DNA of 64,000 nt, taken from Paraphysomonas bandaiensis. Its lineage: Eukaryota; Protista; Chrysophyceae. Shown one piece after another: positions 17,755-47,987 of the stretch. The DNA is taken from positions 62,001 to 126,000 of the forward strand of contig CBFFRP010000164.1 of the NCBI GenBank assembly GCA_965644295.1, in the 5' to 3' direction. A model generated the notes under the pieces. That model saw only the letters and a list, made by a program, of their open reading frames with translations. It did no database searches and had not been told where the DNA came from. Position numbers and translations under genes: made by a program. Position 1 is the stretch's first letter, and each line of letters opens with the position of its first letter.

Positions 17755-17858
17755 CTGGGCCTGGTAACCGTTAATGGTCCATTAATGGTAGTCCAGTTCC
17801 TGGCAATTATAATGCCATTACCATATTACCATTAACCATTAACGGTTACCAGGCCCTG
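17755..17858. mobile_element. hAT-type MITE (family 1), intact copy
   Basis: 23-bp TIR c(a/t)gggcctggtaaccgttaatgg. Flanks cattagac and cactagac form an 8-bp TSD with one mismatch. Confidence 0.88.
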
Positions 17859-20343: not shown

Positions 20344-20573
20344 ATTGCAACGCTTAATAGATGTAGTGTCCAACCACATAGCTATTTTTGTAATAAATAT
20401 AAATCGAACTGCACGGATGATATGCATGTCGAAATGGACCCAGTATATTTATAAATATCCCACTTTTACGAATATTTGGATCACCGTATAACGGGCATGC
20501 CGAACAATAAAATGTTCGGAAAATCGGATTATCTCGACCATATATTTATGATATCTAGAATGTCACGATTTTA

Positions 20574-21337
20574 CAATTAATTGCAATATAATTGCAAATG
20601 TTTTTTTGAAATTAAATTGTAATTATTAGTTATAGCTCGCGCAATTATTATTGCAATTAATTGCAATTTAATTGCGCCAATTATTGTCTAATTAACTTGG
20701 TTACTCATTGCAAACACGTATAGCATCTTCAACAGTATGATGATATTATTGACAATGTATGATATTTACATGGTCAAAACTCTAAATATCCAGGTTTTCG
20801 TCTGCAAAAAACAGTAGAAAGCCCTGATAATCCATGTCCATAGCGCTGCACATCCAGTTCGTAGTGCAATTTAACCCTGCAGTGTCCTGTAAGGCATCCA
20901 AGGTCGGAAGAACATAATTGCCACACTATATATCTTCAACTGGAGGGGTATTGGGCAATACATATACACTATGAATCGAGCTGAACTAAGTGAACTGAGT
21001 TTTGTAGCTCAAAATCAAGAGAAAAGACACATAATCGACCGTTATAAAAAACAGTACCTTTCTTAATGTAAAGAAAACGTTATAATGAGAGGCCAACCTT
21101 CCCACTATTGTACTAGCCATTAAGGGCAATAAATGGCCATCGTCCTTAATGTTTTGCAACTTCTAATTCTAATATTATATGCTCTTATACTATATAGTTA
21201 ATAATTGCCAATTAATTGCAATTTAACTGCAACCTTACAACGAGCAATTATAATTGCAATTATTACGTATGTTCCATGCAATTTAATTGCAATTAACTGC
21301 AATTAATTGAAATTCAATTAATTGTTACGCAGCCCTG
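20574..21337. mobile_element. Non-autonomous hAT-like element (family 2) with AATTGC-rich subterminal repeats
   Basis: AATTGC/TTAATT arrays at ~20574-20700 and ~21200-21325, ending in ttgttacgcagccctg. The same terminus recurs ending at 37207, 40961, 54922 and 55018, and inverted at 47988. The left TIR is not seen. Confidence 0.6.
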
Positions 21338-21455
21338 TTACGAACACAATATATTTCGGCATTTTTTTACCGTTTGGCCACTATCGTCATTCAAACGATA
21401 CCACACTAATGTCCATAAACTGCAAGAACAAAGCACTTAGAATAAACAAAGAACA

Positions 21456-22976
21456 ATGGATATTATTAGAGAGCAAAGTGAGTTCAGAGATGAGATTGCA
21501 CTGCAAACCAAGCAGATGCGGTTAACGGATAGTACCCGCAGGCAGTATGCAGATAGGATCAAGGCATTTTCGCATTGGCTTGATGAGAATTACCCTGCTT
21601 GCGTGGAAAGAGACAACGATAATAAGTTATCACCAATACTTCCAATACCTGATGTTGTAATGGAAAAGTACATGGCACATGTGCTTCTTAAAATCGATAG
21701 TCGAACTGGTCTGTACTATGACCCTCCACAGCATTACTCGTTTGCACACGTTAATGGACATCGAAGTGCTTTTAAAAATATGTACACGGAGAAGAGAATG
21801 AACCCTTCACCGGAAATAGAGAGTATGTTTAAAGAAACTCTCGAGGGATTCAAGAGGAAGGTTGCTGACCTAAAGCAGCGTGGCTGGATGGAGTTTAGGA
21901 CCCATTCAGAGTATATACATATTTGAAGGAGCAGGTGGAGATCAATTTGTTGATAGGGCAGCTACAGGTATATCAAGCAGTGATCCTAACTTTGCTATCC
22001 TTCCACCTCATTTCGATGACACTAATGGTCCGGTTCTATCAGTTGAAGAATGGGAAGATATTCTACCTGGCTTCTCATCATTTTATCCTGAGAATTTCAG
22101 AGTGGCTTTGCCATATCTACTGCTTCGCTGGCATACCATCATCATGACTGGCTATTAGAAACTCTTTCACCAAATCATCCTTTGTTTCTTCAAAGGGTTT
22201 GGACAAGTGGTATTCTACAACGTCTTCGACCGAAGGTATTAACTGGTGTGTTTCATAATGATGTGTCAAGAATGAATGCAACTGATGTTCCACCCTATGT
22301 GAATCTAGCTAATCGTTTTTCGTCGTTGGAAAAAACTGTTGGGAGCTTGTCTAGTGATATGAAAGAAATGAATGCTACTTTACGGTTAATGGCGCGGTGC
22401 CTGTAACTAGTACCCACCTCGACAGTTTACGTGATTCACTTTTAGCAGAAATTAGAACAAGATGTACATCACAGAATGCAGAGCGAATTCCTACACAAGA
22501 AGAGCAATCCACATCACGAGAGAACGCTACATTGCACATTTGGGGTGGGCGCCATCATTTATTTCCAGAGGGCTTTTGTTTTCCGAAAGGTAACGTCAAA
22601 ATGTTGTGGGGTCTATGGTGGGGGGGAGAGCCTCATAGAAATATCTTGCCCTACAGAAGAATCAAAGGCTTCGATTTATCTAGAACTGACAGGGTAAATT
22701 GGAGTAAGTAGCACACTAGTCTCCAAAGCCATAGAGATGAACGAGATCGGAGCAGCAGAGGACATTAATAAACTACTACCACGACAACGAGATGCGTTAT
22801 TTAGCAATGTTTTTATACCTTTTTGTATGAGTATATTCGCGGCTGCTAATCCCGTTCTTCTCGATGATATGCGCATCGGAGAAATGTCATATACGACATT
22901 CTACGATTACATGAAGGGACGCCAGAGGAATAAGCGTAAACGGAATGCAATGGAGCAAACGGCAGAAGATAATTGA
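21456..22976 (+). mobile_element. Crypton-type tyrosine-recombinase transposon relic (internally deleted, frameshifted)
   Basis: N-terminal TRRQYADRIKAFSHWL..GHRSAFKNMY..GFKRKVADLKQRG is fused to GWSLG..YIFEGAGGDQFVDRAATG..FAILPPHF, then a GCR1_C-like C-terminus (FPEGFCFPKG..LWGLWWGG..ILPYRRI). These motifs are typical of stramenopile Cryptons. The central catalytic region appears to be missing. Confidence 0.75.
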
Positions 22977-23295
22977 CTGGCACACGTCTATGTTAGTGTC
23001 GTATGTACGTGAGGGGGGTCTGTGAGACTCTTAACAGTCCCCTTCACGTATATATATGAACAGGCATCGCATTAGTGGAGGGGTTGATGAGAATATGACG
23101 GTCAAGTAGATAGATATCGACTTCTGGTGTAGAAATCATCTTGTTTCATGGCACGATTGTCAGTTTAAAGTAACATAAAGATGAACGTAAGTTGACATAC
23201 ACAGAGTTCATATGGCAGTTCACCATACAACACCAATATACAACAGTATACACATAAATACACATACTACCGTTCTGTTCAACCAGTGTTTGTAC

Positions 23296-23420
23296 GTATC
23301 AGCATCCTTTGTATATTTTTGTTCAGAGATGCCTCTAATATTGAGACAATAATTATCTGTATTCCAGCCGTAGTTGTACTCCAGTAATGTAGAGTATTTT
23401 TACTTCAATTTATTCCCGAA
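23296..23420. repeat. ~125-bp dispersed duplicate (second copy ~27208-27332)
   Basis: The core gatgcctctaatattgagacaataattatctgtatt is shared by both copies. The minus strand reads as a coding fragment (YNYGWNTDNYCLNIRGIS). Confidence 0.85.
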
Positions 23421-23771
23421 ACTTAAACGTCTATACATGCAGATGCCCAGATAGTAACACAAAATCCAGATTATAATAGTAGCTCCTAATGGGTGTGCGA
23501 CGTGATTATATTCGCCTGTGTGGTGGTATTGAGGGGGAGTGTACAGTGTTTATTCCTCATGTCTATACCAGGACCTGGTAACCATTAATGGTTAAACCGG
23601 TATACCACTTTAAGGTATACCAACACAAAATCTCCTTCCTGTCGTAGAACGCTACCAATTTCCTGTAGATCCACCTGCCTATTAGGGGGAGGGCGGTGTT
23701 AATAGCCAAAGAAGGCAGCCACTGTAAGCAAGAGAATTGTAACTTAAAACACCATATGTGCCGTAACGGGG

Positions 23772-24660
23772 TTAGCTTGTAACGTTCTTTGATGAATTCA
23801 TAGACTTGGCGGTCGCGCCCAAAAACGAATTCGGACGACAGCTCCATGGTATATTCGTGCAGAAGTTTTTCGGCGGTTTCGTTGTATTTGAAACGAATAT
23901 CGGGGTTTTCGTTAAGAGAAAGTAGAGCGTTGAAGTAAAGCCTATCCAACTGTAATGGGACCCAATATCTATGGTGTCTGGCAGCGCATAGGGTGGTTGT
24001 AAGGACCGGAAAAACCTGAGTGATCGGACTTCATTGTTAATGATTGCCTCATTGCACCATTGCTGTACAGTTTTGTCAGGAAAATAGTCAGGAAAGAGTA
24101 TTTCTAGCATGTCCACACTTTATCACATACTTAGCATATGTATCCGCGTTATCTATGAACATCTCATGCACGACAAGCACACGGAAAGTTTCGATACAGT
24201 TAAGAGCAATGGCATTTGTCACGATACTATGCGTCGGGAGCATGTCGAATTTTTGGAAAACCCATTTGTAGAATATGTCTAGTTCCGGATGTGACATCCC
24301 CTTTTGGTAAATAAAAATGTTGAATTTTGCAGTATCAAATTTTAAGCCCGGAAATAACTTGTGAATCATCGTCAACCTCTCGCGCACGTTTTTCACGTTG
24401 TGGCCATAGTATGGTCGGAAGTTTTTGACCAAGGTGGCACACCAGTATGGGTATGGGTAGTTCTTGTCCGGTAAGCTGAAATTTTCCAGCACCCAATGGA
24501 CAGTGCTTTCCAAAGCAGCCATGGGACATAACATAAACACCTCGGGAAGAAGACATTCGCCTATATCGTCGACCATTTCATTATCGCCAGGAGGGCATAT
24601 GGCAATTCATGATATGCTGGAACAATTCAATGTCTTCGTAGCTAGATATGGATTTGACAT
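23772..24660 (-). pseudogene. Frameshifted intronless gene, divergent ankyrin-like repeat protein
   Basis: Overlapping ORFs 24088-24576 and 23772-24116. Helical repeats AIALNCIETFRVLV, VIKCGH..MLEIL and AIINNEVRSLRFFRSLQPP resemble degenerate ankyrin repeats. The 5' boundary is approximate. Confidence 0.45.
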
Positions 24661-25803
24661 ACAATAAGTATCGTTCCATGCGCGTTGTAGGGTCTATAAA
24701 CCTATCCAATATACGCTGCACAAGTGCGGGAAATTCCAAAGCAAACGCGGGCTGTGTAATACTGTATATAATTAGCTAAATACTAGAATCACTCGCTCAT
24801 TCGTATTTCATTTCGCTCATCCTCGTTGTAGTATCACATACATAAACTACCACGTAGTAGCTAGTGCGTAGCCTTCTTCGTTCTGGCAAGAGCGAGCCTC
24901 TCCTCCTCGCCTCTGGCTGGTGAATTATAGCTCAAGAATCTCTTAGAAGGCACACCCAAACAAGAACACAGAACACAAACAACGCGCAAGCTGCTACACA
25001 ATCTGTTACCTGCTACTACCTCATAACCTCTGCCCTAATAAATGCGCTGATTGTACATAGCTAGCTATAGCTAGATAACTAGATAGTGTGCATTGTGGCT
25101 GATTAATAACTGTACTAGCTCGAGTAAAACTTTTCGAGCGACCTTTTCTTCTTCTTACTCCTTTTGGCCGACCTCGACTGTCTCCTACAGTGCGTCGTCA
25201 TTCCTCTTTGAGCGATACATGCTACAACATAATAACAGGAGATCCTTTGCATTGCATGCAATAATTCTTCACCACAAAAATACTTCGAAGTTCTCCTTCC
25301 GAGAAGCTCACTACTTGCCCAATACAAGCTACTGCTACGTACATAACATGTATACCAAGTACAAAGCAAACCACGGCGGAACTTTTCATGGCTACTACGT
25401 GTCTCTCCGTCCGCCCAGCCACTCTCCAGAAGGTTATTTTGGAACGTTGTGTTGCTGCCGCGACGACTCTTTCTAGCTAAATAAAAGCGGAAACTGCTTT
25501 TAGCTGACCGACGAGCCGTATAAGTTAGTTGTGGTGGAATGAAGCATGAAGATAACAAATTTAACAATAGTTCGCTGCTCGTCAAAGAGTAATGTTAATC
25601 TTAATTATATTAATTAAAGTCTGATCTTTAACTTTGTACTTTATTAGGCTACATTCCTACAATACAAACAAAGTACTGGTATGCGATACATATGGTGCAG
25701 GTCATAAAGCATCGCATAGCATGTCACTTTGTGTGAACAATCTAAAAATGAATAGCTTCTATATGAAGGCCCTTGGAAGGAGCATACGAGAAGTTTATTT
25801 GAA

Positions 25804-27090
25804 TTATATATTGTTCACTGGACCGAAGAATTCGTAGTTGATTTGATTCTCCGGAATCTGCCATTCGCGCAAGCCGCCATAGATCTTCTGCATGAACTCC
25901 GTCGGCCCACAGAAGTAATAGTGCGAATCGCGATCCACAACGAGGGAATCGATGTTTCGCATTAGCGTGTTTCCATCTGGAAACTTCGTCACATCGTCGT
26001 CATAAAGAGACTTGATGGTCAGGTTGCTGCGCTGCTTGGTCTTGCAGAGATGCTCGATCTCATCATGCATGGCCTCTCCCTCTGGCGATCTCCATGTCTG
26101 AATCATCGTGACATGATTCTTGATGTTTGTGTTCTCCATGATATATTCCAACATACACAAACTAGGAGTTATCCCCACCCCCCCGCTGATCAGCACTATC
26201 GGCTTTTCATCCGGAACCTTCAAGTAATAATCTCCACAAGGTACCCCCACTTGAATCGCATCGCCGACCTTCACCTGAGTATGCAGATGTGTCGATACAG
26301 CCCCGGGAGGACAGTCGGGAAGCAATGGGGCTGCTTTCTTGACTGTGATGCGATATCCATCTTTTCCGGGGGCAGAGGAGAGGGTGTAGTTGCGCACGGT
26401 CACACCAGATGCAGTTGGGACTCGAATCGCAATGTACTGGCCGGGTAAGTAATCAAGGATTGGTTTTCCATCCGCAGGTTTCATTACAAAGGAAACGATG
26501 TTGCCTCCCTCGGGGGTGACGCTATCTACCTTGAATTCCCGATAGCCTTCCCAACCGCCCACCGCTTCGGCCTTTTCATTTCGAAGCTTGCGTTCTCGTT
26601 CGATGAGTAAATATGCAAGAAAATCGTATGCCTCACTCCATGCAGCGGCAACCTCAGGAGTGACGGCATCTTTGAGAACTTTTACGACTGCCCACATCAG
26701 ATTCTCCTTTACGAATTCATACTGATGAGGTAAAACATGAAGCGAAACATGCTTCTGAGCGATGCGTTCAACAGCTTCTGATAAAGCACCGAGATTGTCA
26801 ATGTTGGCTGCATATGCATGTATGCTACAAGCTAAAGCATATGGCTGACGAGCTTTTACTTCCCCTGGAAGAACGACTTGGTGCGTGGGATTGAACATGT
26901 CTTTGACTGGGCTGTTTTCACTAAGCATGCGCTTATACATTTCTGTTGTTATCGTATAACCATGTTCTGCCATGACAGGGGCCGTGGACTTAACAATTCG
27001 AATCGTCTCAGGACTCAAACTTGGTGTAGTTGATAGTCCACGAGCGGACCTTGCAACAAGTTTTGTCTTCAAAAGAAAATTGCGGAACAT
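25804..27090 (-). CDS. hmp: Flavohemoglobin (nitric oxide dioxygenase) with N-terminal mitochondrial-type presequence, intronless
   Basis: Globin domain: ITTEMYKRM, QPYALA..YAANIDNL, IAQKHVSL..QY, AAWSEAYDFLA. FAD domain: PGQYI, RNYTLSS. NAD domain: GGVGITP, YFCGPTEFM, YEFFGP. Confidence 0.95.
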   Translation of the reverse strand: MFRNFLLKTKLVARSARGLSTTPSLSPETIRIVKSTAPVMAEHGYTITTEMYKRMLSENSPVKDMFNPTHQVVLPGEVKARQPYALACSIHAYAANIDNLGALSEAVERIAQKHVSLHVLPHQYEFVKENLMWAVVKVLKDAVTPEVAAAWSEAYDFLAYLLIERERKLRNEKAEAVGGWEGYREFKVDSVTPEGGNIVSFVMKPADGKPILDYLPGQYIAIRVPTASGVTVRNYTLSSAPGKDGYRITVKKAAPLLPDCPPGAVSTHLHTQVKVGDAIQVGVPCGDYYLKVPDEKPIVLISGGVGITPSLCMLEYIMENTNIKNHVTMIQTWRSPEGEAMHDEIEHLCKTKQRSNLTIKSLYDDDVTKFPDGNTLMRNIDSLVVDRDSHYYFCGPTEFMQKIYGGLREWQIPENQINYEFFGPVNNI

Positions 27091-28099
27091 GGTGTTTGCA
27101 CTGATTAGCTTAGGAGTTGTTCAATAATGAATTTATAGCTCAGGGTTGCAAAAATAATGATTCGCTAAGATTAAATTCACATTGAAGAAAACCACTAGTT
27201 TGGAATCGTATCGGCATCATCTGTATATTTTTGTTCCAAGATGCCTCTAATATTGAGACAATAATTATCTGTATTCGAGCCGTAGTTGTATTGCAGTAAT
27301 ATAGAAGGTTTTTGCTTCAATTTACTCCCGAAAAAGTAAGATGCTAGAGTTCAACCTTCAACCAAATTCAAGCGTTATTGCGATATTGTAATACAATATA
27401 TACACTGCATAATATAACGCCATATACTTCTATGTGCCCTATGCATATCTTATGAAGTCACTTCAAGTACTAAACTGAAAAGAACATCCTCATTTCTCTT
27501 TGTATATTGTGATGTTGTATTACAGTAGTACAGCTGTACTTTGCGGTCCACGCATGAAGGTTAAGAGTGATAGTTAACGCATAGCTAACATGAGAGTTAT
27601 CATTCATGACTGCTGTGTAAGTGTTCTGGATTGAGAGTAATGCTCTTAGGGTGTAATGCGCAGGTAACCAATACTGGCCAACGGTGGTGCCCCATCCAGA
27701 GCTATACTTCTAGCTCTTCTACAATTCACTATACTTGAGAGCAAAGCCCTTCTACACGGTCTACTCTCCATATCATCATCATTCTTACACATATCTCACT
27801 ATAATCCCGTGCCGAGGTTGCTCCATACAGTACAGTGCATTGCAGATCAGTGTGTGTGTATGTCTATGCGGCTATCTGTGTGCTGCACCTGCATCGGCAG
27901 TAGGGGGGGTTGTAGGCCCGGGGCTGAGGCGGGAGCTGGTGATGATTAAACCGGTATACCAACACAATCGTCGTTGTTGTTGTTGTGTTATTATTGTCAC
28001 GGTTGTTCAGTTTCATTGTCGAACCACAAAACAACCACCAATAATGGTTCTGCTGACAACTCATTCATACAGTGAAAAAATTGTATAATTTAATACAAT

Positions 28100-28686
28100 A
28101 TGCAATTCATATTCCATAGGAAATATAGTACCACAATAGAAAATAATTCCAATCTGGCCCAGTTACAAACTTTGATTGTGGAAATGCTCCAAGAATTTCG
28201 AGATTCTGACCCTAGTGTTATGGAACGGAGCAGGCCAACCTTTCAACCTGACGAGTATGATGTTCTAATCACTGATATCGCAGAAAATGATTTGATTTCT
28301 ATCGGGAATGAGCTGGGCTATAAGCGCCTTGAAACCACTGAACGAGTTACCGAATATCCAATTTATGGAATTATGTATGGTGCTAATTTTCGAGTATTTG
28401 TACCGTTCGTTGTTCAGAAACGTAAAATCAAGGTTAATGTTAATTATTTGTTCGATAGTGGCTCACCTTGTACGTACCTTCGAAATGACACGCTAATGGC
28501 ACTTGGATTCCAGGAGTTCATACCTAACGATACGAACGTAATAATTAATGGCAAAGGAATGACTGTATATCGATCAAAGGCGCATATCGAAAACATTGAT
28601 TGCTGGGACAGGACTTTATGAGGTGTGCATCACTACTTGTGACACTAAATTATTCTTTGCTCGAGGTCACAGTTGCTACAGTCTGA
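28100..28686 (+). pseudogene. Retropepsin-like (clan AA) aspartic protease, one frameshift near the C-terminus
   Basis: Catalytic VNYLFDSGSPCTYL. The conserved LLGQDF motif lies in the -1 frame at ~28600 (gattgctgggacaggac) and runs to TGA 28684-28686. Confidence 0.65.
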
Positions 28687-29269
28687 TTCTTTATCTTAAC
28701 AAAAGAATGGTTAAGAAATCACAATTGATTTCCCACGATGTTATCTTAAAACAATCTTCCAAGTATAGAAAAATAATAAGCGAACCAAATCAAGTGAGAT
28801 TAACACCCAAGATAGTTCCCAAACTAAATTTTACTTAATGATTTAACTTTAACAATTAAACCCTTACGGGGTATACCGGTTTAAGTACATTATTCAACTA
28901 GTAACAAGCACACTTTAATTTATTTTATTTAGCTTTAAAACATTCACGCCCACCCTACACACTACTAGCTATTAAACCGGTATACCCCGTAAGTGTGTTG
29001 GTATACCCTAAAGGGGTATACCGGTTTAGAATTCGTTTATTATCACAAAAATTATAAAAGAAACAAAATGAAATATTGTATTTTTAACCAAAAACGAAAA
29101 CATACATATACCGCAAATAAGTTCAACCGAATTTCTCAGTACATTTTGGTATGTATTTATTTATTTGTGGTTCTGTTATTTATTTTATTATTGCTATTAG
29201 TTTGTCATACCATTACCGAAAATAAATATTATCGTCGATACAAAAAATGGTTAATACATGTTCGTTGGA

Positions 29270-29416
29270 CAGACATTTGCGAGGCGACTTCAGTGCGATG
29301 TGTGTTGATATGCAAATGCTAATAGGATAGAAAGTCGATGGACATAGCTCGAGCAGAAGGTCACAAAGAAATTATTGCCATCCTGGAACAGAGATTGGCC
29401 AGCTTGTCGACCTAAT
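29270..29416 (+). pseudogene. Ankyrin-repeat C-terminal fragment
   Basis: SMDIARAEGHKEIIAILEQRLASLST* is a typical terminal ankyrin repeat. The upstream frame is interrupted. Confidence 0.5.
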
Positions 29417-29622
29417 AATGAGGTGTGAGTTGGCCAATTGTTGTTCAAGGATCACAAAAATTTCCTTATGGCCTTCTTCTCGAGCTAAGTCTAGCGCAGA
29501 CTTTTCATCCTGTCCATATCATAGTTGTGTGTTAATATTTGTGATAAAGAATAGTATAGGCGGCAAATACTAAACCGGTATAACACATTGACCATATCAT
29601 TGTGTGGGTATACCGGCTTAAC

Positions 29623-29788
29623 AATCTCCCTACGGAATCCCGTGGTCTTTTTTGTATGGAACATAGCCGTGAACATATGGTGGATTCCGAGTGCACCAGT
29701 CGTGGGCGCATTTTCTTTCTCTCACATCCACCATATGTTCACGTTTATGTTCCATACGAAACAATCCTCGTGTTTCCGTAGGGAGATT
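29623..29788. mobile_element. Fold-back element / long imperfect inverted repeat (~60-bp arms)
   Basis: aatctccctacggaa..tatggaacat..cgtgaacatatggtgga pairs with tccaccatatgttcacg..atgttccata..ttccgtagggagatt. Confidence 0.75.
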
Positions 29789-31101
29789 TAAACCGGTATA
29801 CCCCTTTAAGGTATTCCAACACAATGGTAGTGCAGCTCCCGTCAATTATAAAGGTATTACCATTAATGGCCCATTAATGCCATTACAATTAACGGTTACC
29901 AGGCCCTGGTGTATACACGTAGAACGTGTTAGATGTCGTCTTAAATTCATATTTTACGTAATACTACATAGTCATCACTACATAGTCATACCTTCGTGCA
30001 TATTTCAAAAAAATGCCGCCAAAAACTGCGGTGCTACTAATGTAAGTATATAAGTGTCACTTGTGTAGACGTCTTTGGGCTTTGTTGAATAAATAGGCAT
30101 CCGGGAATGGACCTTGGTTCTTGCGGTGACGCACAATCAGCTTCTTAGTAGGGCTAAATAGTAGCATATAAGAGTTACTCAATAGTTAGTTAATTGCTTT
30201 GCCACATTGTTCTGACTTTTACACCCCTATTGCTGAGAACCAGACATTCACTACAATTATTCATACTACAAGGGTTAGAAATTGGGAATACTTTGTACAA
30301 GGTAGGAAATAGGATCAGATAGTCATATCACTGATGATACTTGTCATCAGACAGTCGTCACCATGTACAAGTTATTTTACCAAATTGAAACTCATGTAGT
30401 ACTCTATGCGCTATGTACAATTAGATTGGAGCAGCATATTTTAAAGTATTTATTGGCTGAAGATGCTACAAATCAGAAGTAACAAATCCTTCAAAGCAAA
30501 TGAAACTTATGACGATTACTTGGTACTATAGCACATATTAAGTCAGTAAAAGTTACGCTCTTGCTCTTGCTGTAGCCCACTATTAGAAGTCGGCATCCGC
30601 AGGTTGATTGTTTAATTCACTTACTCGAAATGGCCATCACTACCAAGTTACCAATTAAGCCCCTTCATATCTACCAATTTGGTTCTTCTAACTAGTAAAG
30701 ATTTAATTGAGCTAGTGCTTCATAATCCTTCATCATGTCATCTTGTTGTCGGTAGTGTGGCTCAAGGTATCAGTTTCTAACTCTACACGCTTATCTAAGA
30801 AATAGAATCACCGTATATATATCTTATTTCTCTGAGATTCAGTTTTGATGAATTGTTACGCGATGTTTATTGATATGCCGGTGTAGCGCGTGCTCTTGTA
30901 TTGCTGAGAGACCTCTTTATATAGATATGGGTATGGATTGGTATATCTGTCTCCTCCAGATATGGAAATTGGGATAAACAGAGTCCTGAGTATCTAGATA
31001 CATTCTCTGTTGGGGTATTCGCTGTATAGGGTGAATACAGCAGTATATGCTGCACGAAATTTAGGATATGCATGTTGACAGGCAGAGCTGCTCATTGAGA
31101 G

Positions 31102-35695: not shown

Positions 35696-37816
35696 ACGTA
35701 GAAAATAAAAAATGTGCTATCTTAGCTTATAGTTTTTTACCCTTTTTGCAGAAACATAATTAATCTATGAGGAAAACGTATTCTGTTGAGATTTTAGAGA
35801 ATAAAATATCATATCAGAAACATGAAACAGAGTAAATTATTTGGAGTGAAGATATCATACATATTGTGTTAATTCTCTGTATTATTACTTCACTTGCCTT
35901 TCTTTCTAGAAAAAGTTATTTAATCATTATGTCACATTATATAAGTGTTTGGCATTAGGGTTGTTAGATCTTGACATTATTAGACGTTTAAATTTTACTG
36001 ATTACCAACTGATTCAACTCACATTTATAAAATTGAGATCAAATATCACTGGGTACGTGAACATGTTGATCCATAATCCTGAAGGACCATTCAACACTGC
36101 GACATTGAATTATGTTGGAGAGATTATCAGACCACTGACATTGCAACAAAATTATTAGTAGTGAATGTCTTATTATTAGCAATAGGCGTTTAGAAGTCAG
36201 AATTAATTTAGCACTACAATGCAACAACTAAGTACTAAGTAGTGCCTAACTCTGATATATCCTAATATATATATAATATATAACGTCTGATTGTTTAGCA
36301 ACAGGCATGTAAGTGTTAAAACTAAGCAGAAATCTATCCAGTACTTAAATACTAATATATATCCTACTATTTGACTCTACGAAAGCTGCATACGCGTCGC
36401 CGCAAGCACCAAGGTGCGACCACCTCCGCTTTAACTCTCTATCAAACAAAGCAAACGCAGTGAGCAAGCAGAATATTGATATACCTGACATCATCATCTG
36501 ACTTCAGAATTTTTGAGTGCCTAAGGTGAACGGTCTGGATGCCTGATTCAGCAGACGTCTACACAAGTGACTCTTATATTGATGTTCCTTGTAAATTGTG
36601 AAGCACAAGCATTTCGCTATGAGTGGGCAGAGCAATATCTGCTTACTATATTTTAATATGCGACTCACGTTAGCTTCCCGGCGAAATAGCTCCGGTACTT
36701 ATCCCCCAGACTGAGCGCTTTGACTGTATAAGACTGTGTCTATAAGATAATATTATGGGTCGGTAGTAGAGATAATATAAACGTAGCGTAACAATGACTG
36801 ATAAGCGATGTTGAGTATAATTTTACAAGTCAATTATTGTTGAGTGAGTTCAAGGTTCAGTTAAATAAGTTTACCCACCTAATGATATCAAAAGTTGATA
36901 TGATGACAGTGATGATGTAGTTTGAATCTCAACACAGTGTAGCATTTGATCTATGATAGCATGCAGTGGAAGCGAGCACGTCTTAACCAATACAAACTTG
37001 ATACCGCAGCCTGAAGCACTTGTAGGACTACTAATGTATAATGTATAGCTATATGTGCTATGTGAGTATGAAGCGTAGTATTAATTTGTTGGGACAGCAA
37101 AAATAATACTTGCAATTGTAATTTATTACAACATGTATGTGTCAACTTATTTTATATGAATATCTGATTATAACAACTTATTGACAATTTATTGTTACGC
37201 AGCCCTGTCCTATTGTACATATCGCACTAAATTGAATCTTAGTTGAACTAGGCATGTCGAAATCTTGCAGCTCATTCCATTTAATACACATTGAACTACG
37301 GCTTAAATTCCGATCTAAAAAAGTGTCATCCAAGAAATAATCTATGCACTGATATACAGAGGAATCAAAAAGATGTCGCCGATATCCACGACAACATCAA
37401 GTGTATTCTTTTCTTTTACATTGTAGCGTGTATTAATTTTTGTAGGCAATCACCTTGTCACTTTCCTAAGGGAACTTTGGTGCTTAAATAATAATCAACT
37501 CACACTGTATTGATTTGATCACATCAGGCAAAAACGGACACTGACTAACACACATACACATATATCATTATAAAAAAAAGTACGCGATACATCACTTATC
37601 AGCAGTGTAGATGTAAGTGTCACAAGTGTTGAGATGTTTTAACAGTTGCAGGTTTCTGCAGTTAGTACAGCAAATTCCCGTACTTATCCTATGAGAGGGG
37701 ACAAAAAAACTAAAAAAAAGCTAGTTATGGTTATCACTTATGGTTAGCCCTAAATACAATAATACAAACTATAATAAAAGAGTTCCAAGTGAAGCACAGA
37801 ATTACTCAAGGTAGTA

Positions 37817-39283: not shown

Positions 39284-41377
39284 TACGGGGGTTTTATATA
39301 AAAAAAACAACGAAATGTGTTGGAAACCCCTGTTTTTATGGGATTGTGTAATTAGAACACAGCAGGAAAACATGATTTCAAGATTTTTCGAAACAAACAA
39401 TCAGATCTGTGTAATTCTAATTACACAGGAGTAAACAGATTTTTAACATATACTTACAGCATATCTTAAGACACATATACGAATAAGTAGAATAACCTGC
39501 AGTAGAAGCGATAGTAAATCCTAGACAAATGGACCCAGCTGCATTACACCTCATAATGCAAGGACAAAACGAAAGGAATGTATTGGAAGAATGTCCACAC
39601 TATCCAGAATACTCAACAATCTTATAGCTATACGACTTGGTTGGCGCAATCGAAACAGATGATGATGTCCTGATGCATACTGGACAAGCGCATGCATTAA
39701 AGATATTTTAAACCCTGGGGAAAAGAGTATTGTGACAATGTCTGTCCAGACAAATCTGCTTTGGTGACATGAGTGTGACTCTCGGCCATGAACTATACCT
39801 GTTAAGGTTGCTCTTTCATGTAAATTTCTACTTTTGTATTTTGGGTGACTTTTGTAGATATACATATGGAGGATATCAGGCAGCAGTTTGCTTAATTAAT
39901 TATTAGTAGTTTAGAAGTCAGAATTAATTTAGCATTACAATGCAACAACTAAGTAGTGCCTAACTCTGATATATCCTAATATATATATAATATATAACGT
40001 CTGATTGTTTAGCAACAGGCATGTAAGTGCTAAAACTAAGCAGAAATCTATCCAGTACTTAAATATTAATATCCTACTATTTGACTCTACGAAAGCTGCA
40101 TACACGTCGCCGCAAGCACCAAGGTGCGACCACCTCCGCTTTAACTCTATCACTCAAAGCAAACGCAGTGAGCAAGCAAAATGTTGATATACCTGACATC
40201 ATCATCTGACTTCAGAATTTTTGAGTGCCTAAGGTGAAAGCCTGAATGTCTGGCTTCAACAGGTAGCAAACTATCCCAGATGACCTTGAGGTGGGCCCAA
40301 TCCCGGATGCCTGTTTATTCGTCAAGGCCCGATGACGTCTACACAAGTGACTCTTATATTAATGTTCCTTGTAAATTGTGAAGCACAAGCATTTGGCTAT
40401 GAGTGGGCAGAGCAATATCTGCTTACTATATTTTAATATGCGGCTCACGTTAGCTTCCCGGCGAAATAGCTCCGGTACTTATGTACTTATCCCCCAGACT
40501 GAGCGCTTTGACTGTATAAGACCGTGTCTATAAGATAATATTATGGATCGGTAGTAGAGATAATATAAACGTAGCGAATAACAATGACTGATAAGCGATG
40601 TTGAGTATAATTTTACAAGTCAATTGTTGTTGAGTGAGTTCAAGGTTCAGTTAATTAAGTTTACCCACCTAATGATATCAAAAGTTGATATGATGACAGT
40701 GATGATGTCGTTTCGGATCTCAACACAGTGTAGCGTTTGATCTATGATAGCAGGCAGTGGAAGCGAGCATGTCTTAACCAATGCAAACTTGATACCGCAG
40801 CCTGAAGCACTTGTAGGACTACTAATGTATAATGTATAGCTATGTGCTATGGGAGTATGAAGTGTAGTATTAATTTGTTGGGACAGCAAAAATAATACTT
40901 GCAATTGTAATTGACTAACATATATGTCAACTTATTGACAATTTATTGTTACGCAGCCCTGTCCTATTGCACATATCGCACTAAATTGAATCTTAGTTGA
41001 ACTAGGCATGTCGAAATCTTGCAGCTCATTCCATTTAATACACATTGAACTACGGCTTAAATTCCGATCTCAAAAAGTGTCATCCGAGAAATAATCTATG
41101 CACTGATGTACAGAGGATTAAAGAAGATATCCACGACAACATCAAGTTTATTCTTTTTTTTTTACATTGTAGCGTCTATTACTTTTTGTATGCAATCACC
41201 TTGCCACTTTCCTAAGGGAACTTTGGTGCTTAAATAATAATCAAGTCACACTTACTAATACACATACACATATATTATAAAAAGTACGCGATACAACACA
41301 TATATAGTGTAATAATACAATAATACAAACTCTAATAAAAGAGTTCCAAGTGAAGCACGGAATTACTCAAGGTAGTA

Positions 41378-43310: not shown

Positions 43311-45825
43311 ATGGGTACATTTGAGTTTTGTGAGAATTTTATAGAGCGTGAATATGAAAATTTCCAAGAAGCAAATGCTCTAAACTCTGCAGCTCTGACT
43401 CGATTTGGAAGCACACTTCTACTCTGCATTATGTTGATTAGGAATAAGCGAAGAGTTGCAAAAGCATTTGAAAGTGGGAATGTTGGTATTGGCATGCGAT
43501 ATCTTATATTACCATCATACTATGATTATGTGGTAGCTCTAATATTGACCTCGTTCGTGTATGGGTTGTTCAATTTGTTAGGAGGAAGCTTGCGGGAGTT
43601 GCCTGTCGTTGCTGCTGTGCAAGGAGGAGTGAATCATATGTTCAGGGAAGGGTTGGCTTTTTTTTTAATGCAATATGGTGCAGGATACTATGCAATGAGA
43701 CGAGCTGCCTTTTATGCTGTACTTTGGGGAGCTATTTGTTTCGTGGTTCTTCTTTTGGTGTACCGGTTGAAGGAAAAAGGAGATAGAATGAGCAAGCTTT
43801 CCCTTTTCGGAAATATGTTCTTTTGTATATTTGTACTACTGTTCTACTGCGTAATTACGTTTTCCCCAGTGGAGCGAGTGTATAGAAGACCAGCTTTAAA
43901 GCTGTTTGCGATGTTTCAAATTTGTGACATGTCCCTGTGGATATTAATCGTCGTGTTTTTGTATATGGAGTTTGATGTGGCCTATTGCATAATGTTTACA
44001 ACTAGAACTATATTAGAAGGGGTAGTGGAGCAAATTGTAGTGTTCTACGTTCTTTGTCTCGATAGCGAGGTGATGTAGAATAAAATATATGACTCATGAC
44101 TTACGCAATGTGCAGTTCTGGCAAGGAATTTCGGGACAGCTCGACAACCCTTTGGCGGGAGTTTGGGATCTGGAGCTGGATACTGCGGCCGCGATGGGAC
44201 AGCAGCTCTCTGTTGTCGAAAAAAACTCTCGAAAACTTCCTATAATTCATTTTGGCATGATAACCCTAGATCAGCACCTGGGGTATGTTGCAGGCGGACT
44301 CTCTCGGGTCTACTTTGGGTCTATTAAGAAAGAGCCAGTTGCCATAAAGATATTGTTTGCGATGGAGCTCACACCGAAAGTGGTGAAGTCGTTTTACGAA
44401 GAGGTTCAAGTACTATATGAGCTACAACACGAGAATGTCGTACGGTGCATCGGTGTGTCTGTAATGCCACCAGCAGTCTGTGTTGTGCTGGAGCATTGCA
44501 AGCACGGATCTCTCTTCGACTACCTTCATAAGCCCCGTAAAGTTCCTGTTCATAGTCCTTCTCGGCAGCAGTTTGTAGGGAAGAGTTTGGACGGGGACGC
44601 TCACACAGAGTTAAGTGATATATCAGCTCTCCACCGGTAGGCAAATAGCATCCTATAAAATCTTGATTTATGCTGTCGTATTAAGAAACAGGTCGCATTC
44701 AGGAAGCAGTAGGAAAAGCTCGGTGGATGAGCAGGGTAAACAGGGAAGCCAGTCTAATAAGCCAGTCTCGAGTCCACTACATCATCCTTTTACACAATCT
44801 CGACCGCATCACATGCGCGGGAGCTCTGGTAACCCTGCGAACTTGGAGGATTTGGCCAGCGAATTTAGGCGAAGCGAAACCACCTCTATATCTAGTAGAG
44901 CTTCTTTCACATATAATGATAGAGTGAAGGCCCTTTTTTTGGGACGCAATGAATTCCTCTCACCTGTAGCTGATAGTCCTGTTCCGGATACCACGCAAGA
45001 CAGGAAATCATTCTTTGCAGATCGTTTCAGTATAGGGGAAAGGGAAAGTTCAAAGTATCTTCCGCGAAACTCTAGTTTAACTACATCTTCGAAACGCAGA
45101 CCTAGTCATATTGAAAGCAAACCAACATTCTCTATGGTTGAAAAGTTTAGAATGATAATCGATGCCAGCACTGGTCTCGCCTTCCTTCACGAGAGAGGCT
45201 ATATGCACTGCGACATAAAGTCACCAAACTTCCTTGTATCGAATGTGAGCGACTGTGTTACCCATGTTGTTAAATGCCAATTGACTTCATGCAGGAAAAA
45301 GTTGTGAAGCTGGCTGACTTGGGTGAAGCGCGTGCATTGGATTCGTGTGCGCAATTCGCCCGCCTTCCGAACCCTGCCATAAACTGGAAGGCCCCAGAGG
45401 TACATTCTACCCCTCCCATGTGCTTAGTTTGTACTTACACTTTGTCGTGTAGCTCCTAACACCAAATATGTCGATGCGATCATACACGCCAGCCAGCGAT
45501 GTATACGGGTTGGCGATGGTCATATCCGAGGTAGTAACAACGTCTTCAACTTATCAAACGCTAAATCTCTTTCCAGATAATCTTGCAGGAGATTCCATTA
45601 GATGAGTTACTGCGCAGCTCATCACCAGAACAGTGCTATCATTATCTCGTGAATGAAAACTGTCGTCCTATTTTACCCGATAGCATTCCATTAGCGTTCA
45701 GAAATATCTTAACGCTGGCGTGGAATTCTGACCCGGATAGTCGCCCAACGTGTGCTGATATAGCCAACACGGCTCAAGAGTGTTTACAGAAAATGCTGGC
45801 TGAAAGTATACCGCAGCGTGTGTGA
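43311..45825 (+). CDS. Multi-pass (7TM/GPCR-like) receptor fused to a TKL protein kinase, multi-exon
   Basis: ~7 hydrophobic segments in 43311-44069, spliced to FWQG... The kinase has VAIK, HENVVRCIG, HCDIKSPN, DLGE, WKAPE, SDVYG and RPTC. Confidence 0.85.
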
Positions 45826-46350: not shown

Positions 46351-46743
46351 GTATCCCTCAACAATGTCGGACTCGCACCTTTTCGTGGTGTTCTGGGGGA
46401 CAAGTACCGGAGAGATTCTCTCTGGGAAACTAACGTGAGCCGCAAACATAGTCAGCAGATATTCTTCTGCCCACTCATAGCCGACTACTTGTGTGATACA
46501 AGGGACACCAATAAGTGTCACTTGTGTAGACGTCTTTGGGCCCTGACGAATAAACAGGCATCCGGGAATGGGTCCACCTCAAGGGCATCTGGGACAGGGC
46601 CCACCTGAAAGGTAACCGGGGTATTGGGCTGCCTGCTGAAGTCAAGCATCCGGGATGTTCACCTTAAGAACTCAGAGCGGAAGTGGTCGCACCTTGGTGC
46701 TTGCGGCGACGCACAAGCAGCTTCCGTAGCGTTAAATAGTAGC
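46351..46743 (-). repeat. Dispersed GC-rich structured repeat family (longest copy)
   Basis: Shared blocks gcgtcgccgcaagcaccaaggtgcgaccac, ccttgaggtgggccc..cccggatgcc and gacgtctacacaagtgac also occur at ~36375-36712, ~40085-40500, ~47257-47487 and ~30049-30165. A fragment matching the distal end of this copy is at ~5533-5605. Confidence 0.8.
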
Positions 46744-47140: not shown

Positions 47141-47987
47141 TATCGTCGATAACTAACCACATAACATCGCTCTCCAAGCTGCTGAGTGTTGGAAAGCCTT
47201 TCGACATGCATGTTGGGTTTTCAAGAGGATGCCTACTGCGAAGAACTTAAAGGGTGGATGACCTTGAGGTGGGCCCATTCCCGGATGCTTGCTTATTCGT
47301 CATGGCCCAAAGACGTCTATATACACAATTGACACTTATTAGTGTCCCTTGTACCTTGTGCCACGCAAGCATTTGGTTATGTGTGGTAGAACAATATCAT
47401 CTGCTGACTATAATATAATATTATTAATAATGCAGCTCACGTTAGTTTCCCGGAAATATATCTCCGGTACGTATCCCCCAGAACACCGACATTTTGCTAG
47501 ACTACAAATAGTCTTTGAATTTGCTATTATATATATCAACATTCGACATATCCGGATGAATGATTTAAAACTTAATTAAATGAACGTTGTACGTGTACAC
47601 TCAATACTCTATTAAAATTATTGTTAATATCTCATATTGTTCATTGTTATGCACTAAATTCAATTTGTTTCTACTGCCAATCAATATCATATATATGATC
47701 TTACATAGTCAATACATTTCAGTTTAACTACTCTATTATTCCTATCATATCATTAATTCATAAAACTGCTAACCACTACTGTACTTTCAAAGCATTAAGT
47801 GCTCCGGGCGCTAGTTAACTAGTTATTATAGAGGTTAAGAGAGCTCGTCGTAACTCTAGTTTGGAGTAAATATATGGTGGGAGCTAGCTATATGCCAGCG
47901 AGTCATACATCCACCTGTGTCCCATGAGAATTGGTGGTAAACTACAATACATCCAATTGAGTGGGAGTGTTGACTTCTGCAGTGGTA

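What the first reader, a model, noticed from the sequence alone, without database searches (positions are those of the whole stretch)
23592..29823. Eight copies of a recombination-site-like dyad partition the cargo into cassettes
Seen: the site has two palindromic GGTATACC arms around a 7-nt asymmetric spacer. Copies occur in both orientations and pair by shared variants (ccccgtaag at 28862/28972; ctaaacc at 29029/29570). One copy (27946) is collapsed to a single arm. Sites bracket the protease gene (27946..28884), the ankyrin fragment (28994..29587) and a fold-back element (29601..29823). Established: tyrosine-recombinase core sites have inverted arms with 6-8-bp spacers. Inference: an integron- or shufflon-like cassette array in a eukaryote. 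Alternative readings are nested TIR elements with TGT..ACA or TTAA ends, or hairpin termini of a HUH element.
Basis: partly seen in the sequence, partly recalled or inferred. Interest (0 to 1): 0.8.

Follow-up and report, generated by a model that had tools for sequence, protein, structure and literature searches.

The report
Clustered 38-bp dyad repeats, mechanism unresolved
Eight copies of a 38-base palindrome-rich motif mark both ends and the right-hand inside of a 6.2-kb gene-carrying block that landed inside a small hAT transposon in a marine protist; the motif is real and rare, but nothing shows it works as an integron- or shufflon-like cassette system.

Summary
A 38-nt unit (TTAAACC-GGTATACC-N7-GGTATACC-AACACAAT) occurs eight times in 23592-29825 and nowhere else in the 64-kb window. 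GGTATACC occurs 9 times against 0.67 expected.

Only three copies (A, E, H) are complete dyads. Three (B, F, G) lack one 15-nt half, and two (C, D) keep one arm.

A and H are direct repeats. They sit exactly at the edges of a clean 6.2-kb insertion into a high-copy hAT MITE, with up to 5 nt (AATGG) shared at both junctions.

Contigs from four public runs reproduce every junction and show no inverted or excised form. Depth suggests about 9-11 near-identical copies of the E-type core per genome, with unrelated flanks on both sides. The segments between sites are single-copy.

No recombinase or transposase lies inside the block. A dead Crypton with different end motifs lies 0.6-3 kb upstream of the MITE. 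The inverted pairs have no target-site duplications.

The integron and shufflon architectures are not met. My best reading (about 0.35) is terminal recognition repeats of a small non-DDE, direct-terminal-repeat mobile unit, with a Crypton-type recombinase the leading candidate and a Rep/HUH enzyme second. The internal copies would be decayed fold-back relics.

A genome-wide census could not be run. Another first-stage note describes a possibly identical 35-bp hairpin site elsewhere in this genome.

The parts
23561..23591 (+). Left part of the interrupted hAT-type MITE. It comprises the 8-bp target-site duplication GTCTATAC (23561-23568), the terminal inverted repeat CAGGACCTGGTAACC (23569-23583) and one ATTAATGG subterminal motif (23584-23591).
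   Evidence: (I5). An intact paralogue at 17755-17858 gives the uninterrupted sequence. The family is very high-copy in the reads.
23592..23629 (+). Site A, a full dyad with spacer ACTTTAA. It is the left edge of the 6.2-kb insertion and a direct repeat of H (35/37 identical).
   Evidence: (D3). Hairpin -6.9 kcal/mol, z -3.0.
23629..24576 (-). Broken ORFs in three frames. They form a divergent helical-repeat (ankyrin-like) pseudogene or an intron-containing gene. The last ORF runs through site A into the MITE.
   Evidence: No Pfam hit. The Atlas feature search points weakly to ankyrin-repeat clusters, with recognition below the reliable level.
25619..27137 (-). Intact, expressed, intronless flavohaemoglobin (NO dioxygenase) gene. 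The CDS is 25804-27090.
   Evidence: Pfam Globin + FAD_binding_6 + NAD_binding_1. Four 1.5-kb RNA-type contigs are 100% identical. Nearest relatives are eukaryotic (oomycetes, MMETSP) at 48-62% identity; bacteria are at 43-45%.
27190..27710 (.). Very high-copy dispersed repeats. One is a ~129-bp element at 27207-27335, with a second copy at 23281-23421. Another repeat spans ~27402-27710. They lie between the divergently transcribed flavohaemoglobin and protease-like genes. They are not related to the dyad site.
   Evidence: (D1). Summed depth is up to about 3000 times baseline, with loose ends at 27207 and 27335.
27946..27968 (+). Site B, the collapsed form (one GGTATACC box, no spacer). It lies in the 5' untranslated part of a transcript.
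   Evidence: Transcript contig L005 (window 27664-28811) reads through it unchanged.
28100..28621 (+). 173-aa ORF with a DSGS motif, possibly retropepsin-like. It is transcribed.
   Evidence: Pfam PF12384 E 0.021, below cut-off. Transcript L005. No PDB relative.
28860..28884 (-). Site C, one arm plus the variant spacer CCGTAAG. It forms a 25-nt inverted repeat with D (96%).
   Evidence: I8. The C..D hairpin is -21.8 kcal/mol, z -4.8. No homology extends beyond the 25 nt.
28972..28993 (+). Site D, one arm plus the same variant spacer. It abuts E head-to-head with no bases between.
   Evidence: The D/E palindrome is -16.4 kcal/mol, z -6.4.
28994..29029 (-). Site E, a full dyad and the form that other genomic copies match. 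It makes the best hairpin: a 9-10 bp stem with a 5-nt loop.
   Evidence: Hairpin -8.7 kcal/mol, z -4.9. Depth at 29010 is 8.6-11 times baseline in the two deep runs.
29336..29496 (.). Inverted duplication (69-nt arms, 78% complementary) inside the E-F interval. It encodes two convergent, similar C-terminal peptide fragments that look ankyrin-like by eye only.
   Evidence: I1. Translations. No Pfam hit.
29570..29588 (+). Site F, collapsed and degenerate. It shares the CTAAACC variant with E.
   Evidence: (I12).
29599..29825 (.). G-H fold-back. G is a collapsed site (<-, 29599-29621) and H is a full site (->, 29788-29825). They form the tips of one 227-nt hairpin with 63-nt inner arms that are 86% complementary. 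H is the right edge of the 6.2-kb insertion.
   Evidence: I2, I24. The fold is -70.4 kcal/mol, z -14.6. The interior is single-copy in the reads.
29825..29916 (+). Right part of the interrupted hAT-type MITE. The terminal inverted repeat is 29894-29908 and the 8-bp target-site duplication GTGTATAC is 29909-29916.
   Evidence: (I5). The target-site duplication matches the left copy at 7 of 8 positions.

Best explanation
The 38-nt unit is the terminal recognition repeat of a small, low-copy family of non-autonomous mobile units. These units move by a non-DDE route that uses direct, not inverted, terminal repeats. They carry arbitrary DNA, here ordinary host genes.

Sites A and H are the two ends of one 6.2-kb unit that inserted into the middle of a resident hAT MITE. 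The insertion left 2-5 identical bases (GG up to AATGG) at both junctions.

The enzyme is supplied in trans. The leading candidate is a Crypton-type tyrosine recombinase that excises the unit as a circle and integrates it by crossover at a short xATGG core next to the dyads. A Rep/HUH enzyme of the Replitron kind is second.

The six internal copies are not working cassette boundaries. They are decayed by-products: small fold-back derivatives or inverted duplications of site-bearing ends (C-D, E-F, G-H), piled head-to-head at the right end of the unit, plus one solo collapsed copy (B). The locus is now fixed and apparently inert.

Shown:
- the sites and their orientations;
- the clean insertion into the MITE;
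- the single-copy intervals;
- the low copy number of the site;
- the absence of rearranged contigs.

Inferred:
- mobility of the 6.2-kb block as a unit;
- the type of enzyme;
- the origin of the internal copies.
For: (1) The block is a clean insertion. The two MITE parts on either side add up to a complete element when aligned with the intact paralogue at 17755-17858. They share one 8-bp target-site duplication at 7 of 8 positions.

(2) A and H are direct repeats (35/37 identical) lying exactly at the two edges. Neither TIR reading gives a consistent pair for the outer ends.

(3) AATGG is present at both junctions. CryptonS elements of oomycetes and a diatom have 5-6 bp terminal direct repeats, mostly TATGG (PMC3212892). 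Replitron-1 inserts just after RG, has direct terminal repeats and makes short variable duplications (PMC10288648).

(4) Other genomic copies share only the site. In X3, depth at 29010 is 245 against a baseline of about 28.5. In X18, it is 1196 against about 109. The excess integrates to only about 34-41 nt, and the intervals between sites stay at baseline.

(5) None of the three inverted pairs has a target-site duplication.

(6) Cryptons exist in this genome. ORF 21456-21923 has the features of the N-terminal domain of Crypton-type recombinases (QRICH1/ALOG/Phage_int_SAM_1 clusters, score 0.96).

(7) The canonical copy E forms a good hairpin.
Against: - No recombinase or Rep gene lies in the block, and none could be linked to the site.
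- The neighbouring Crypton relic carries different end motifs and no GGTATACC.
- AAT is part of the site's own right-end consensus (B, G, H), so only GG is certainly target-derived.
- The paralogous MITE has two ATTAATGG motifs, so an 8-nt target deletion with no duplication is an equally valid reading of the junction.
- A recombinase crossover inside the dyad would leave half-sites at the ends, not two full sites. The crossover would therefore have to lie outside the dyads.
- The inverted internal pairs with shared private variants fit a TIR or fold-back reading more naturally.
- Only this one unit could be inspected. The copy-number estimate is indirect because it comes from contig depth.
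Confidence: 0.35

Rival explanations
1. The unit is the terminal inverted repeat of a low-copy family of cut-and-paste (DDE) or fold-back non-autonomous transposons. C-D, E-F and G-H would be three small hairpin-type elements inserted side by side with abutted ends. A and B would be solo ends left by deletions.
For: There are three inverted pairs with the TTAA side inward. C/D share private variants and so do E/F. G-H folds as a near-perfect 227-nt hairpin with the site at its very tips. All eight copies start with TTAA or CTAA, which would fit a TTAA or TAA target. Another first-stage note reports a hairpin-shaped Harbinger in this genome (unchecked).
Against: No target-site duplication flanks any pair in either reading of the ends. 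The interiors are single-copy, and other genomic copies share no subterminal sequence. The outermost copies A and H are direct repeats, so neither reading closes the 6.2-kb insertion. The canonical copy E has no canonical partner in 64 kb.
Confidence: 0.25
2. The unit is a miniature palindromic element of the REP/BIME kind, or simply a hairpin-prone sequence. The copies in this locus would have multiplied by local fold-back priming and inverted duplication after breaks at the hairpin, not by insertion of cassettes.
For: Orientation alternates from C to H, with head-to-head junctions 0 and 10 nt apart. The same kilobase holds several further fold-backs that do not involve the site (I1) or extend well beyond it (I2). 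Three copies are collapsed, as expected from slippage between the two 8-bp boxes. Dispersed copies share only about 35-40 nt.
Against: This does not explain why two full direct copies sit exactly at the edges of a clean 6.2-kb insertion in a MITE. C/D homology stops at 25 nt. No eukaryotic nuclear precedent or enzyme is known to me.
Confidence: 0.2
3. This is the first reader's reading: an active integron- or shufflon-like array in which a recombinase inserts, excises or inverts the segments between sites.
For: The unit is a dyad with a 7-nt spacer. Sites occur in both orientations. The E-F segment holds two convergent, similar C-terminal coding fragments, which is reminiscent of shufflon segments. 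A Crypton relic lies nearby.
Against: Five of the eight sites are incomplete. Interval sizes and contents are not cassette-like. The convergent fragments are closed by stop codons. The nearby recombinase gene is internally deleted and has other end motifs. No alternative junction appears in contigs of four runs. Site B sits unchanged in a transcript from another strain.
Confidence: 0.07

Closest known systems
CryptonS elements (tyrosine-recombinase DNA transposons of oomycetes and diatoms; Kojima and Jurka 2011, PMC3212892)
   Same: There are no terminal inverted repeats for the outer unit. A short direct repeat sits at both junctions (AATGG here, mostly TATGG there). The host appears to be a stramenopile-like protist with Crypton relics, one of them 0.6-3 kb upstream of the MITE.
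   Different: No recombinase lies inside the unit. Published Cryptons are not described with 38-bp dyad repeats at both ends or with host-gene cargo. The adjacent relic has other end motifs.
Replitrons (Rep/HUH transposons of algae, plants and stramenopiles; PMC10288648)
   Same: Both have direct terminal repeats and palindromic sequence at an end. Both insert immediately after an RG dinucleotide and make a short duplication that includes it.
   Different: Replitron repeats are about 6 bp, and the hairpin is described at the right end only. No Rep gene is seen here. The internal inverted copies have no counterpart.
Integron attC arrays and the R64 shufflon (sfx sites, Rci)
   Same: Both involve short imperfect palindromic sites that separate unrelated DNA segments. 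In the shufflon, sites occur in both orientations and segments carry convergent 3' coding pieces (my knowledge; geometry).
   Different: There is no adjacent intact recombinase, no uniform cassette structure and no rearranged forms. Most sites are defective.
Bacterial REP/BIME palindromic units and REPINs mobilised by RAYT (HUH) transposases
   Same: Both are 35-40-nt imperfect palindromes that are dispersed at low similarity of flanks and clustered in alternating orientation (my knowledge).
   Different: This is a eukaryotic nuclear genome. There are about ten copies rather than hundreds. No RAYT-like gene is known here.
MITE and fold-back transposons with short TIRs
   Same: Both show inverted pairs with unrelated interiors, and G-H is a complete hairpin.
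   Different: There are no target-site duplications and no shared subterminal sequence. The interiors are single-copy, and the outer ends are direct.

Membership tests
Integron | Integrase gene with an adjacent attI site at the head of the array | tested here: not met
   No recombinase ORF lies in 23.5-30 kb. The only recombinase-like ORF (21456-21923) is outside the MITE, is internally deleted and has other motifs.
Integron | attC sites all in one orientation, each closing a single promoterless ORF | tested here: not met
   Orientation is -> -> <- -> <- -> <- ->. Intervals range from 0 bp to 4.3 kb. The 4.3-kb interval holds two genes with their own transcripts.
Shufflon | Inversion polymorphism between inverted sites within a culture | tested here: not met
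   No opposite-strand joints occur at any site in contigs of four runs. This is a weak test, because contigs drop rare variants.
Shufflon | Segments supply alternative in-frame 3' ends to one constant gene | tested here: not met
   The convergent fragments in E-F are separated from the site-crossing ORF by two stop codons. No constant 5' gene reads into a site.
Crypton (CryptonS) | Encodes a tyrosine recombinase, or shares its ends with a copy that does | not testable with these tools
   There is no recombinase in the unit. The rest of the genome could not be searched. The metagenome scan returned only chance matches.
Crypton (CryptonS) | 5-6 bp terminal direct repeats (mostly TATGG) and no TIRs | tested here: inconclusive
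   AATGG is at both junctions, but AAT belongs to the site consensus. An alternative alignment to the paralogous MITE gives no duplication. The literature feature comes from PMC3212892.
DDE TIR transposon / MITE | Inverted terminal repeats flanked by a target-site duplication of constant length | tested here: not met
   C-D, E-F and G-H have no matching flanks. TTAA/CTAA precedes every copy and cannot be told apart from part of the repeat. The outer ends A and H are direct.
DDE TIR transposon / MITE | Multiple copies sharing subterminal or internal sequence | tested here: not met
   The intervals are at single-copy depth. The excess depth at E spans only about 34-41 nt.
IS200/IS605-like or Replitron-like HUH element | Subterminal hairpins or direct repeats at both ends on one strand, plus a conserved short target next to the left end | tested here: inconclusive
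   A and H are on the same strand and can fold, and the insertion follows GG. However, the 4-5 nt upstream of the eight copies show no common motif, and no Rep or TnpA gene is seen.
Known RNA families | Match to an Rfam model at the gathering score | tested here: not met
   There are only two sub-threshold miRNA-model hits, both far below the gathering score.

The most novel reading that the evidence does not exclude
The 38-nt hairpin would be the recognition site of a eukaryotic site-specific joining system driven by a Crypton-type tyrosine recombinase or a Rep/HUH enzyme. That system would move and stack unrelated DNA segments, including ordinary host genes such as the only flavohaemoglobin gene, between a handful of landing sites. 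It would be a nuclear functional analogue of integron or REP-RAYT systems. The present locus would be an old, partly decayed array of this kind. The '35-bp hairpin site that joins unrelated fragments' noted on another piece of this genome would be a second array.
Probability: 0.2. Interest if true: 0.85.

Novelty: new variant of a known kind. Interest (0 to 1): 0.55.

Why it matters
Nobody knows what DNA Crypton recombinases (or Replitron Reps) recognise. No cargo-carrying, non-autonomous unit of either kind has been described, to my knowledge.

This locus offers a short, sharply bounded, low-copy dyad at both edges of a clean, datable insertion that carries expressed host genes. That gives a concrete candidate site which can be tested for binding and cutting, and counted genome-wide.

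If the site instead turns out to be the TIR of a small fold-back family, the locus is an ordinary transposon pile-up. Its only interest would then be that a single-copy host gene now lives inside a MITE.

Tried and rejected
- **Metagenome scan for other copies.** I scanned metagenome contigs with a variable-gap pattern. It returned 120 loci, all chance matches, and none carries the full or collapsed unit. Two of those loci are labelled as gut-metagenome contigs. None was taken for human DNA, and none was used further.
- **Exact scans of other collections.** Scans of viral contigs and of prokaryote genomes for the dyad or the E-type core found nothing, or one chance hit with unrelated flanks.
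- **Word search with the site-encoded peptide** (CWYTLKGYTGL frame): no candidate.
- **Is B sitting in a degenerate MITE copy?** If so, the site would be native to a MITE subfamily. The alignments are not better than shuffles, p about 0.15-0.2. Rejected.
- **Does C/D homology extend into the E flank?** Not significant. Rejected.
- **Circle junction from the 29824->23930 joint.** This is an artefact, because copy A lies 301 nt outside the laid stretch and aligns to H.
- **TATGG between F and G as a Crypton core.** TATGG/CCATA occurs about once per 315 nt here, so this is not informative.
- **Possible ninth copy at 43749-43771.** It lies inside a long ORF and has 5 mismatches. Treated as chance.
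- **Literature search for GGTATACC.** Nothing relevant.
- **Rfam, promoter and terminator scans.** Nothing.
- **Atlas search for the protease-like ORF.** Failed twice because the machine was busy.
- **Adapter or linker artefact.** Considered because hairpin sites that join unrelated DNA can be adapters. Rejected because independent short-read assemblies and a transcriptome reproduce the junctions.

Full report
**1. What is in the sequence**

Reading 23400-30100 and the repeat and pattern scans confirm a unit of about 38 nt. Its consensus is TTAAACC-GGTATACC-CCTTTAA-GGTATACC-AACACAAT.

It occurs eight times. In the list below, '->' means this reading is on the + strand.
- A -> 23592-23629
- B -> 27946-27968
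- C <- 28860-28884
- D -> 28972-28993
- E <- 28994-29029
- F -> 29570-29588
- G <- 29599-29621
- H -> 29788-29825

GGTATACC occurs 9 times in the window against 0.67 expected, always inside this stretch. A profile of the three full copies finds nothing credible elsewhere in 64 kb.

Only A, E and H are complete dyads, and H has one mutated arm. B, F and G lack one 15-nt half (box plus spacer). C and D keep one box and share the variant spacer CCGTAAG.

The conserved unit ends sharply on both sides. The right-end consensus is ACACAAT (B, G, H).

E is the best hairpin at -8.7 kcal/mol, z -4.9. H barely folds.

**2. The setting**

The whole stretch from A to H is an insertion into a hAT-type MITE.

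The MITE has 15-nt terminal inverted repeats at 23569-23583 and 29894-29908. Its 8-bp target-site duplication is GTCTATAC / GTGTATAC, matching at 7 of 8 positions (I5).

An intact paralogue lies at 17755-17858 with its own 8-bp duplication. Aligned with it, the left 23 nt plus ATTAATGG and the right 84 nt of the interrupted copy add up to one complete element.

The junctions read ...CCATTAATGG|TTAAACC... and ...CAACACAA|TGGTAG.... AATGG therefore stands at both junctions.

Two cautions apply. First, AAT belongs to the site's own right end. Second, the paralogue has two ATTAATGG motifs, so the number of truly duplicated target bases is somewhere between 0 and 5.

**3. What lies between the sites**

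- **A-B (4.3 kb).** This interval holds broken ORFs of a divergent helical-repeat gene on the minus strand. It also holds an intact, intronless flavohaemoglobin gene, whose 1.5-kb transcript contigs match at 100%. The gene's nearest relatives are eukaryotic (oomycetes, MMETSP protists) at 48-62% identity, ahead of bacteria at 43-45%. Two very high-copy repeats complete the interval.
- **B-C (0.9 kb).** A transcribed 173-aa ORF with a DSGS motif and only a sub-threshold retropepsin-type Pfam hit. The transcript starts upstream of B and reads through it.
- **C-D.** 87 nt.
- **D-E.** No bases between.
- **E-F.** 541 nt containing a 69-nt inverted duplication that encodes two convergent, similar C-terminal peptides. 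Both are closed by stops and neither has a Pfam hit.
- **F-G.** 10 nt.
- **G-H.** A 227-nt hairpin at -70.4 kcal/mol, z -14.6.

These are not cassettes of one gene each.

**4. Evidence from public reads**

Twenty runs hold the stretch. I laid the contigs of four runs, labelled as four organisms from different studies, on 23930-29929 at 80% likeness.

All four carry the locus at essentially 100% identity, and every site and junction is bridged in at least two runs.

No joint links any two sites in the opposite or skipped sense. The only site-related joint (29824->23930) is produced by copy A, which lies 301 nt outside the laid stretch and aligns to H.

The intervals C-D, E-F and G-H, and the genes, are at baseline depth. 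They are therefore single-copy.

At the centre of E the depth is well above baseline:

| Run | Depth at 29010 | Baseline | Ratio |
|---|---|---|---|
| X3 | 245 | about 28.5 | 8.6 |
| X18 | 1196 | about 109 | 11 |

No variant letter reaches the 10% reporting level at this position. The excess integrates to only about 34-41 nt.

My inference is that the genome holds roughly nine to eleven near-identical copies of the E-type core, with flanks unrelated on both sides. In contrast, the outer MITE and the repeats at 27.2-27.7 kb are present in hundreds to thousands of copies.

Contigs cannot exclude rare rearranged molecules.

**5. Enzymes**

No recombinase, transposase or Rep ORF lies in the block, or among the larger ORFs of the window.

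ORF 21456-21923 has the features of the N-terminal DNA-binding domain of Crypton-type tyrosine recombinases. By my reading, the following frame carries a GW...Y...GDQ tail, and the catalytic middle part is missing.

This relic has its own motifs: CGAACA-N6-TGTTCG at 20501 and arrays of TTGCAATTAATTGCAA. It has no GGTATACC. It shows that Cryptons live in this genome but does not tie them to the site.

**6. Interpretation**

The TIR reading explains the inverted pairs and the G-H hairpin. It fails on four tests:
- no target-site duplications;
- no shared subterminal sequence;
- single-copy interiors;
- direct orientation of the two copies that bound the actual insertion.

The integron and shufflon readings fail on orientation, interval content, integrity of sites, absence of an enzyme and absence of rearranged forms.

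What fits the outer boundaries is a mobile unit with direct terminal repeats and a short junction repeat. Two eukaryotic groups are known to have that signature.
- CryptonS elements of stramenopiles have 5-6 bp terminal direct repeats, mostly TATGG (PMC3212892).
- Replitrons have direct terminal repeats, insert after RG and make short variable duplications. They are present in several stramenopile groups (PMC10288648).

I therefore favour, at about 0.35, a non-autonomous unit of this general kind, with the Crypton route ahead of the Rep route. On this view the internal copies are decayed fold-back derivatives that accumulated head-to-head at the right end.

A REP/BIME-like miniature palindrome that multiplies locally by fold-back repair gets about 0.2. 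A small DDE fold-back family gets about 0.25. Both remain serious rivals. An active cassette or shufflon system is unlikely, at about 0.07.

**7. Earlier notes of this scan**

One note reads the same stretch as a cargo unit in a hAT MITE bounded by direct dyad sites. I verified this independently.

Other notes report Cryptons with TATGG junctions and paired dyads at their ends. I checked one such dyad at 20501 in this window.

A further note reports a 35-bp hairpin site joining unrelated fragments on another piece of the genome. This may be the same site, but I could not check it.

**8. Limits**

The decisive genome-wide census could not be run. The one metagenome scan was wasted on a pattern that was too loose. 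The reads tools are limited to one call each.

Noticed in passing
window 20480-22976: A Crypton-type tyrosine-recombinase relic. The N-terminal domain ORF (21456-21923) runs straight into a shifted frame that carries the C-terminal GW...Y...GDQ tail, so the catalytic core appears deleted. Upstream lie a CGAACA-N6-TGTTCG dyad (20501-20518) and two arrays of TTGCAATTAATTGCAA palindromes (20570-20668, 21204-21314).
   Followed up: partly
window 23281-23421 and 27190-27333: Two copies (87% identical) of a ~129-bp element. In the reads its summed depth is up to about 3000 times baseline, with sharp loose ends at 27207 and 27335. One copy sits about 70 nt upstream of the flavohaemoglobin transcript start. 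It could be a SINE- or MITE-like element, or a promoter-bearing repeat.
   Followed up: partly
window 27402-27710: A second very high-copy repeat, with many variant letters and joints in the reads. The transcript contig of the protease-like ORF starts inside it, at 27664.
   Followed up: no
window 17755-17858: An intact copy of the hAT-type MITE that is interrupted at 23569/29908. It has an 8-bp target-site duplication CATTAGAC / CACTAGAC and repeated ATTAATGG subterminal motifs.
   Followed up: yes
window 25804-27090: The only flavohaemoglobin (NO dioxygenase) gene seen is intronless, expressed and single-copy. It lies inside an insertion within a MITE. Its nearest relatives are oomycete and other protist proteins, not bacterial ones, so it looks like a relocated host gene rather than a recent bacterial import.
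   Followed up: partly
window 30048-30188: A short dispersed repeat with further copies at about 36553-36579, 40294-40359, 46511-46571 and 47272-47339 (81-96% identical).
   Followed up: no
window 29336-29496: An inverted duplication encoding two convergent C-terminal peptides (...AREEGHKEI.AILEQ...). It is not itself bounded by the dyad unit and is single-copy in the reads.
   Followed up: partly
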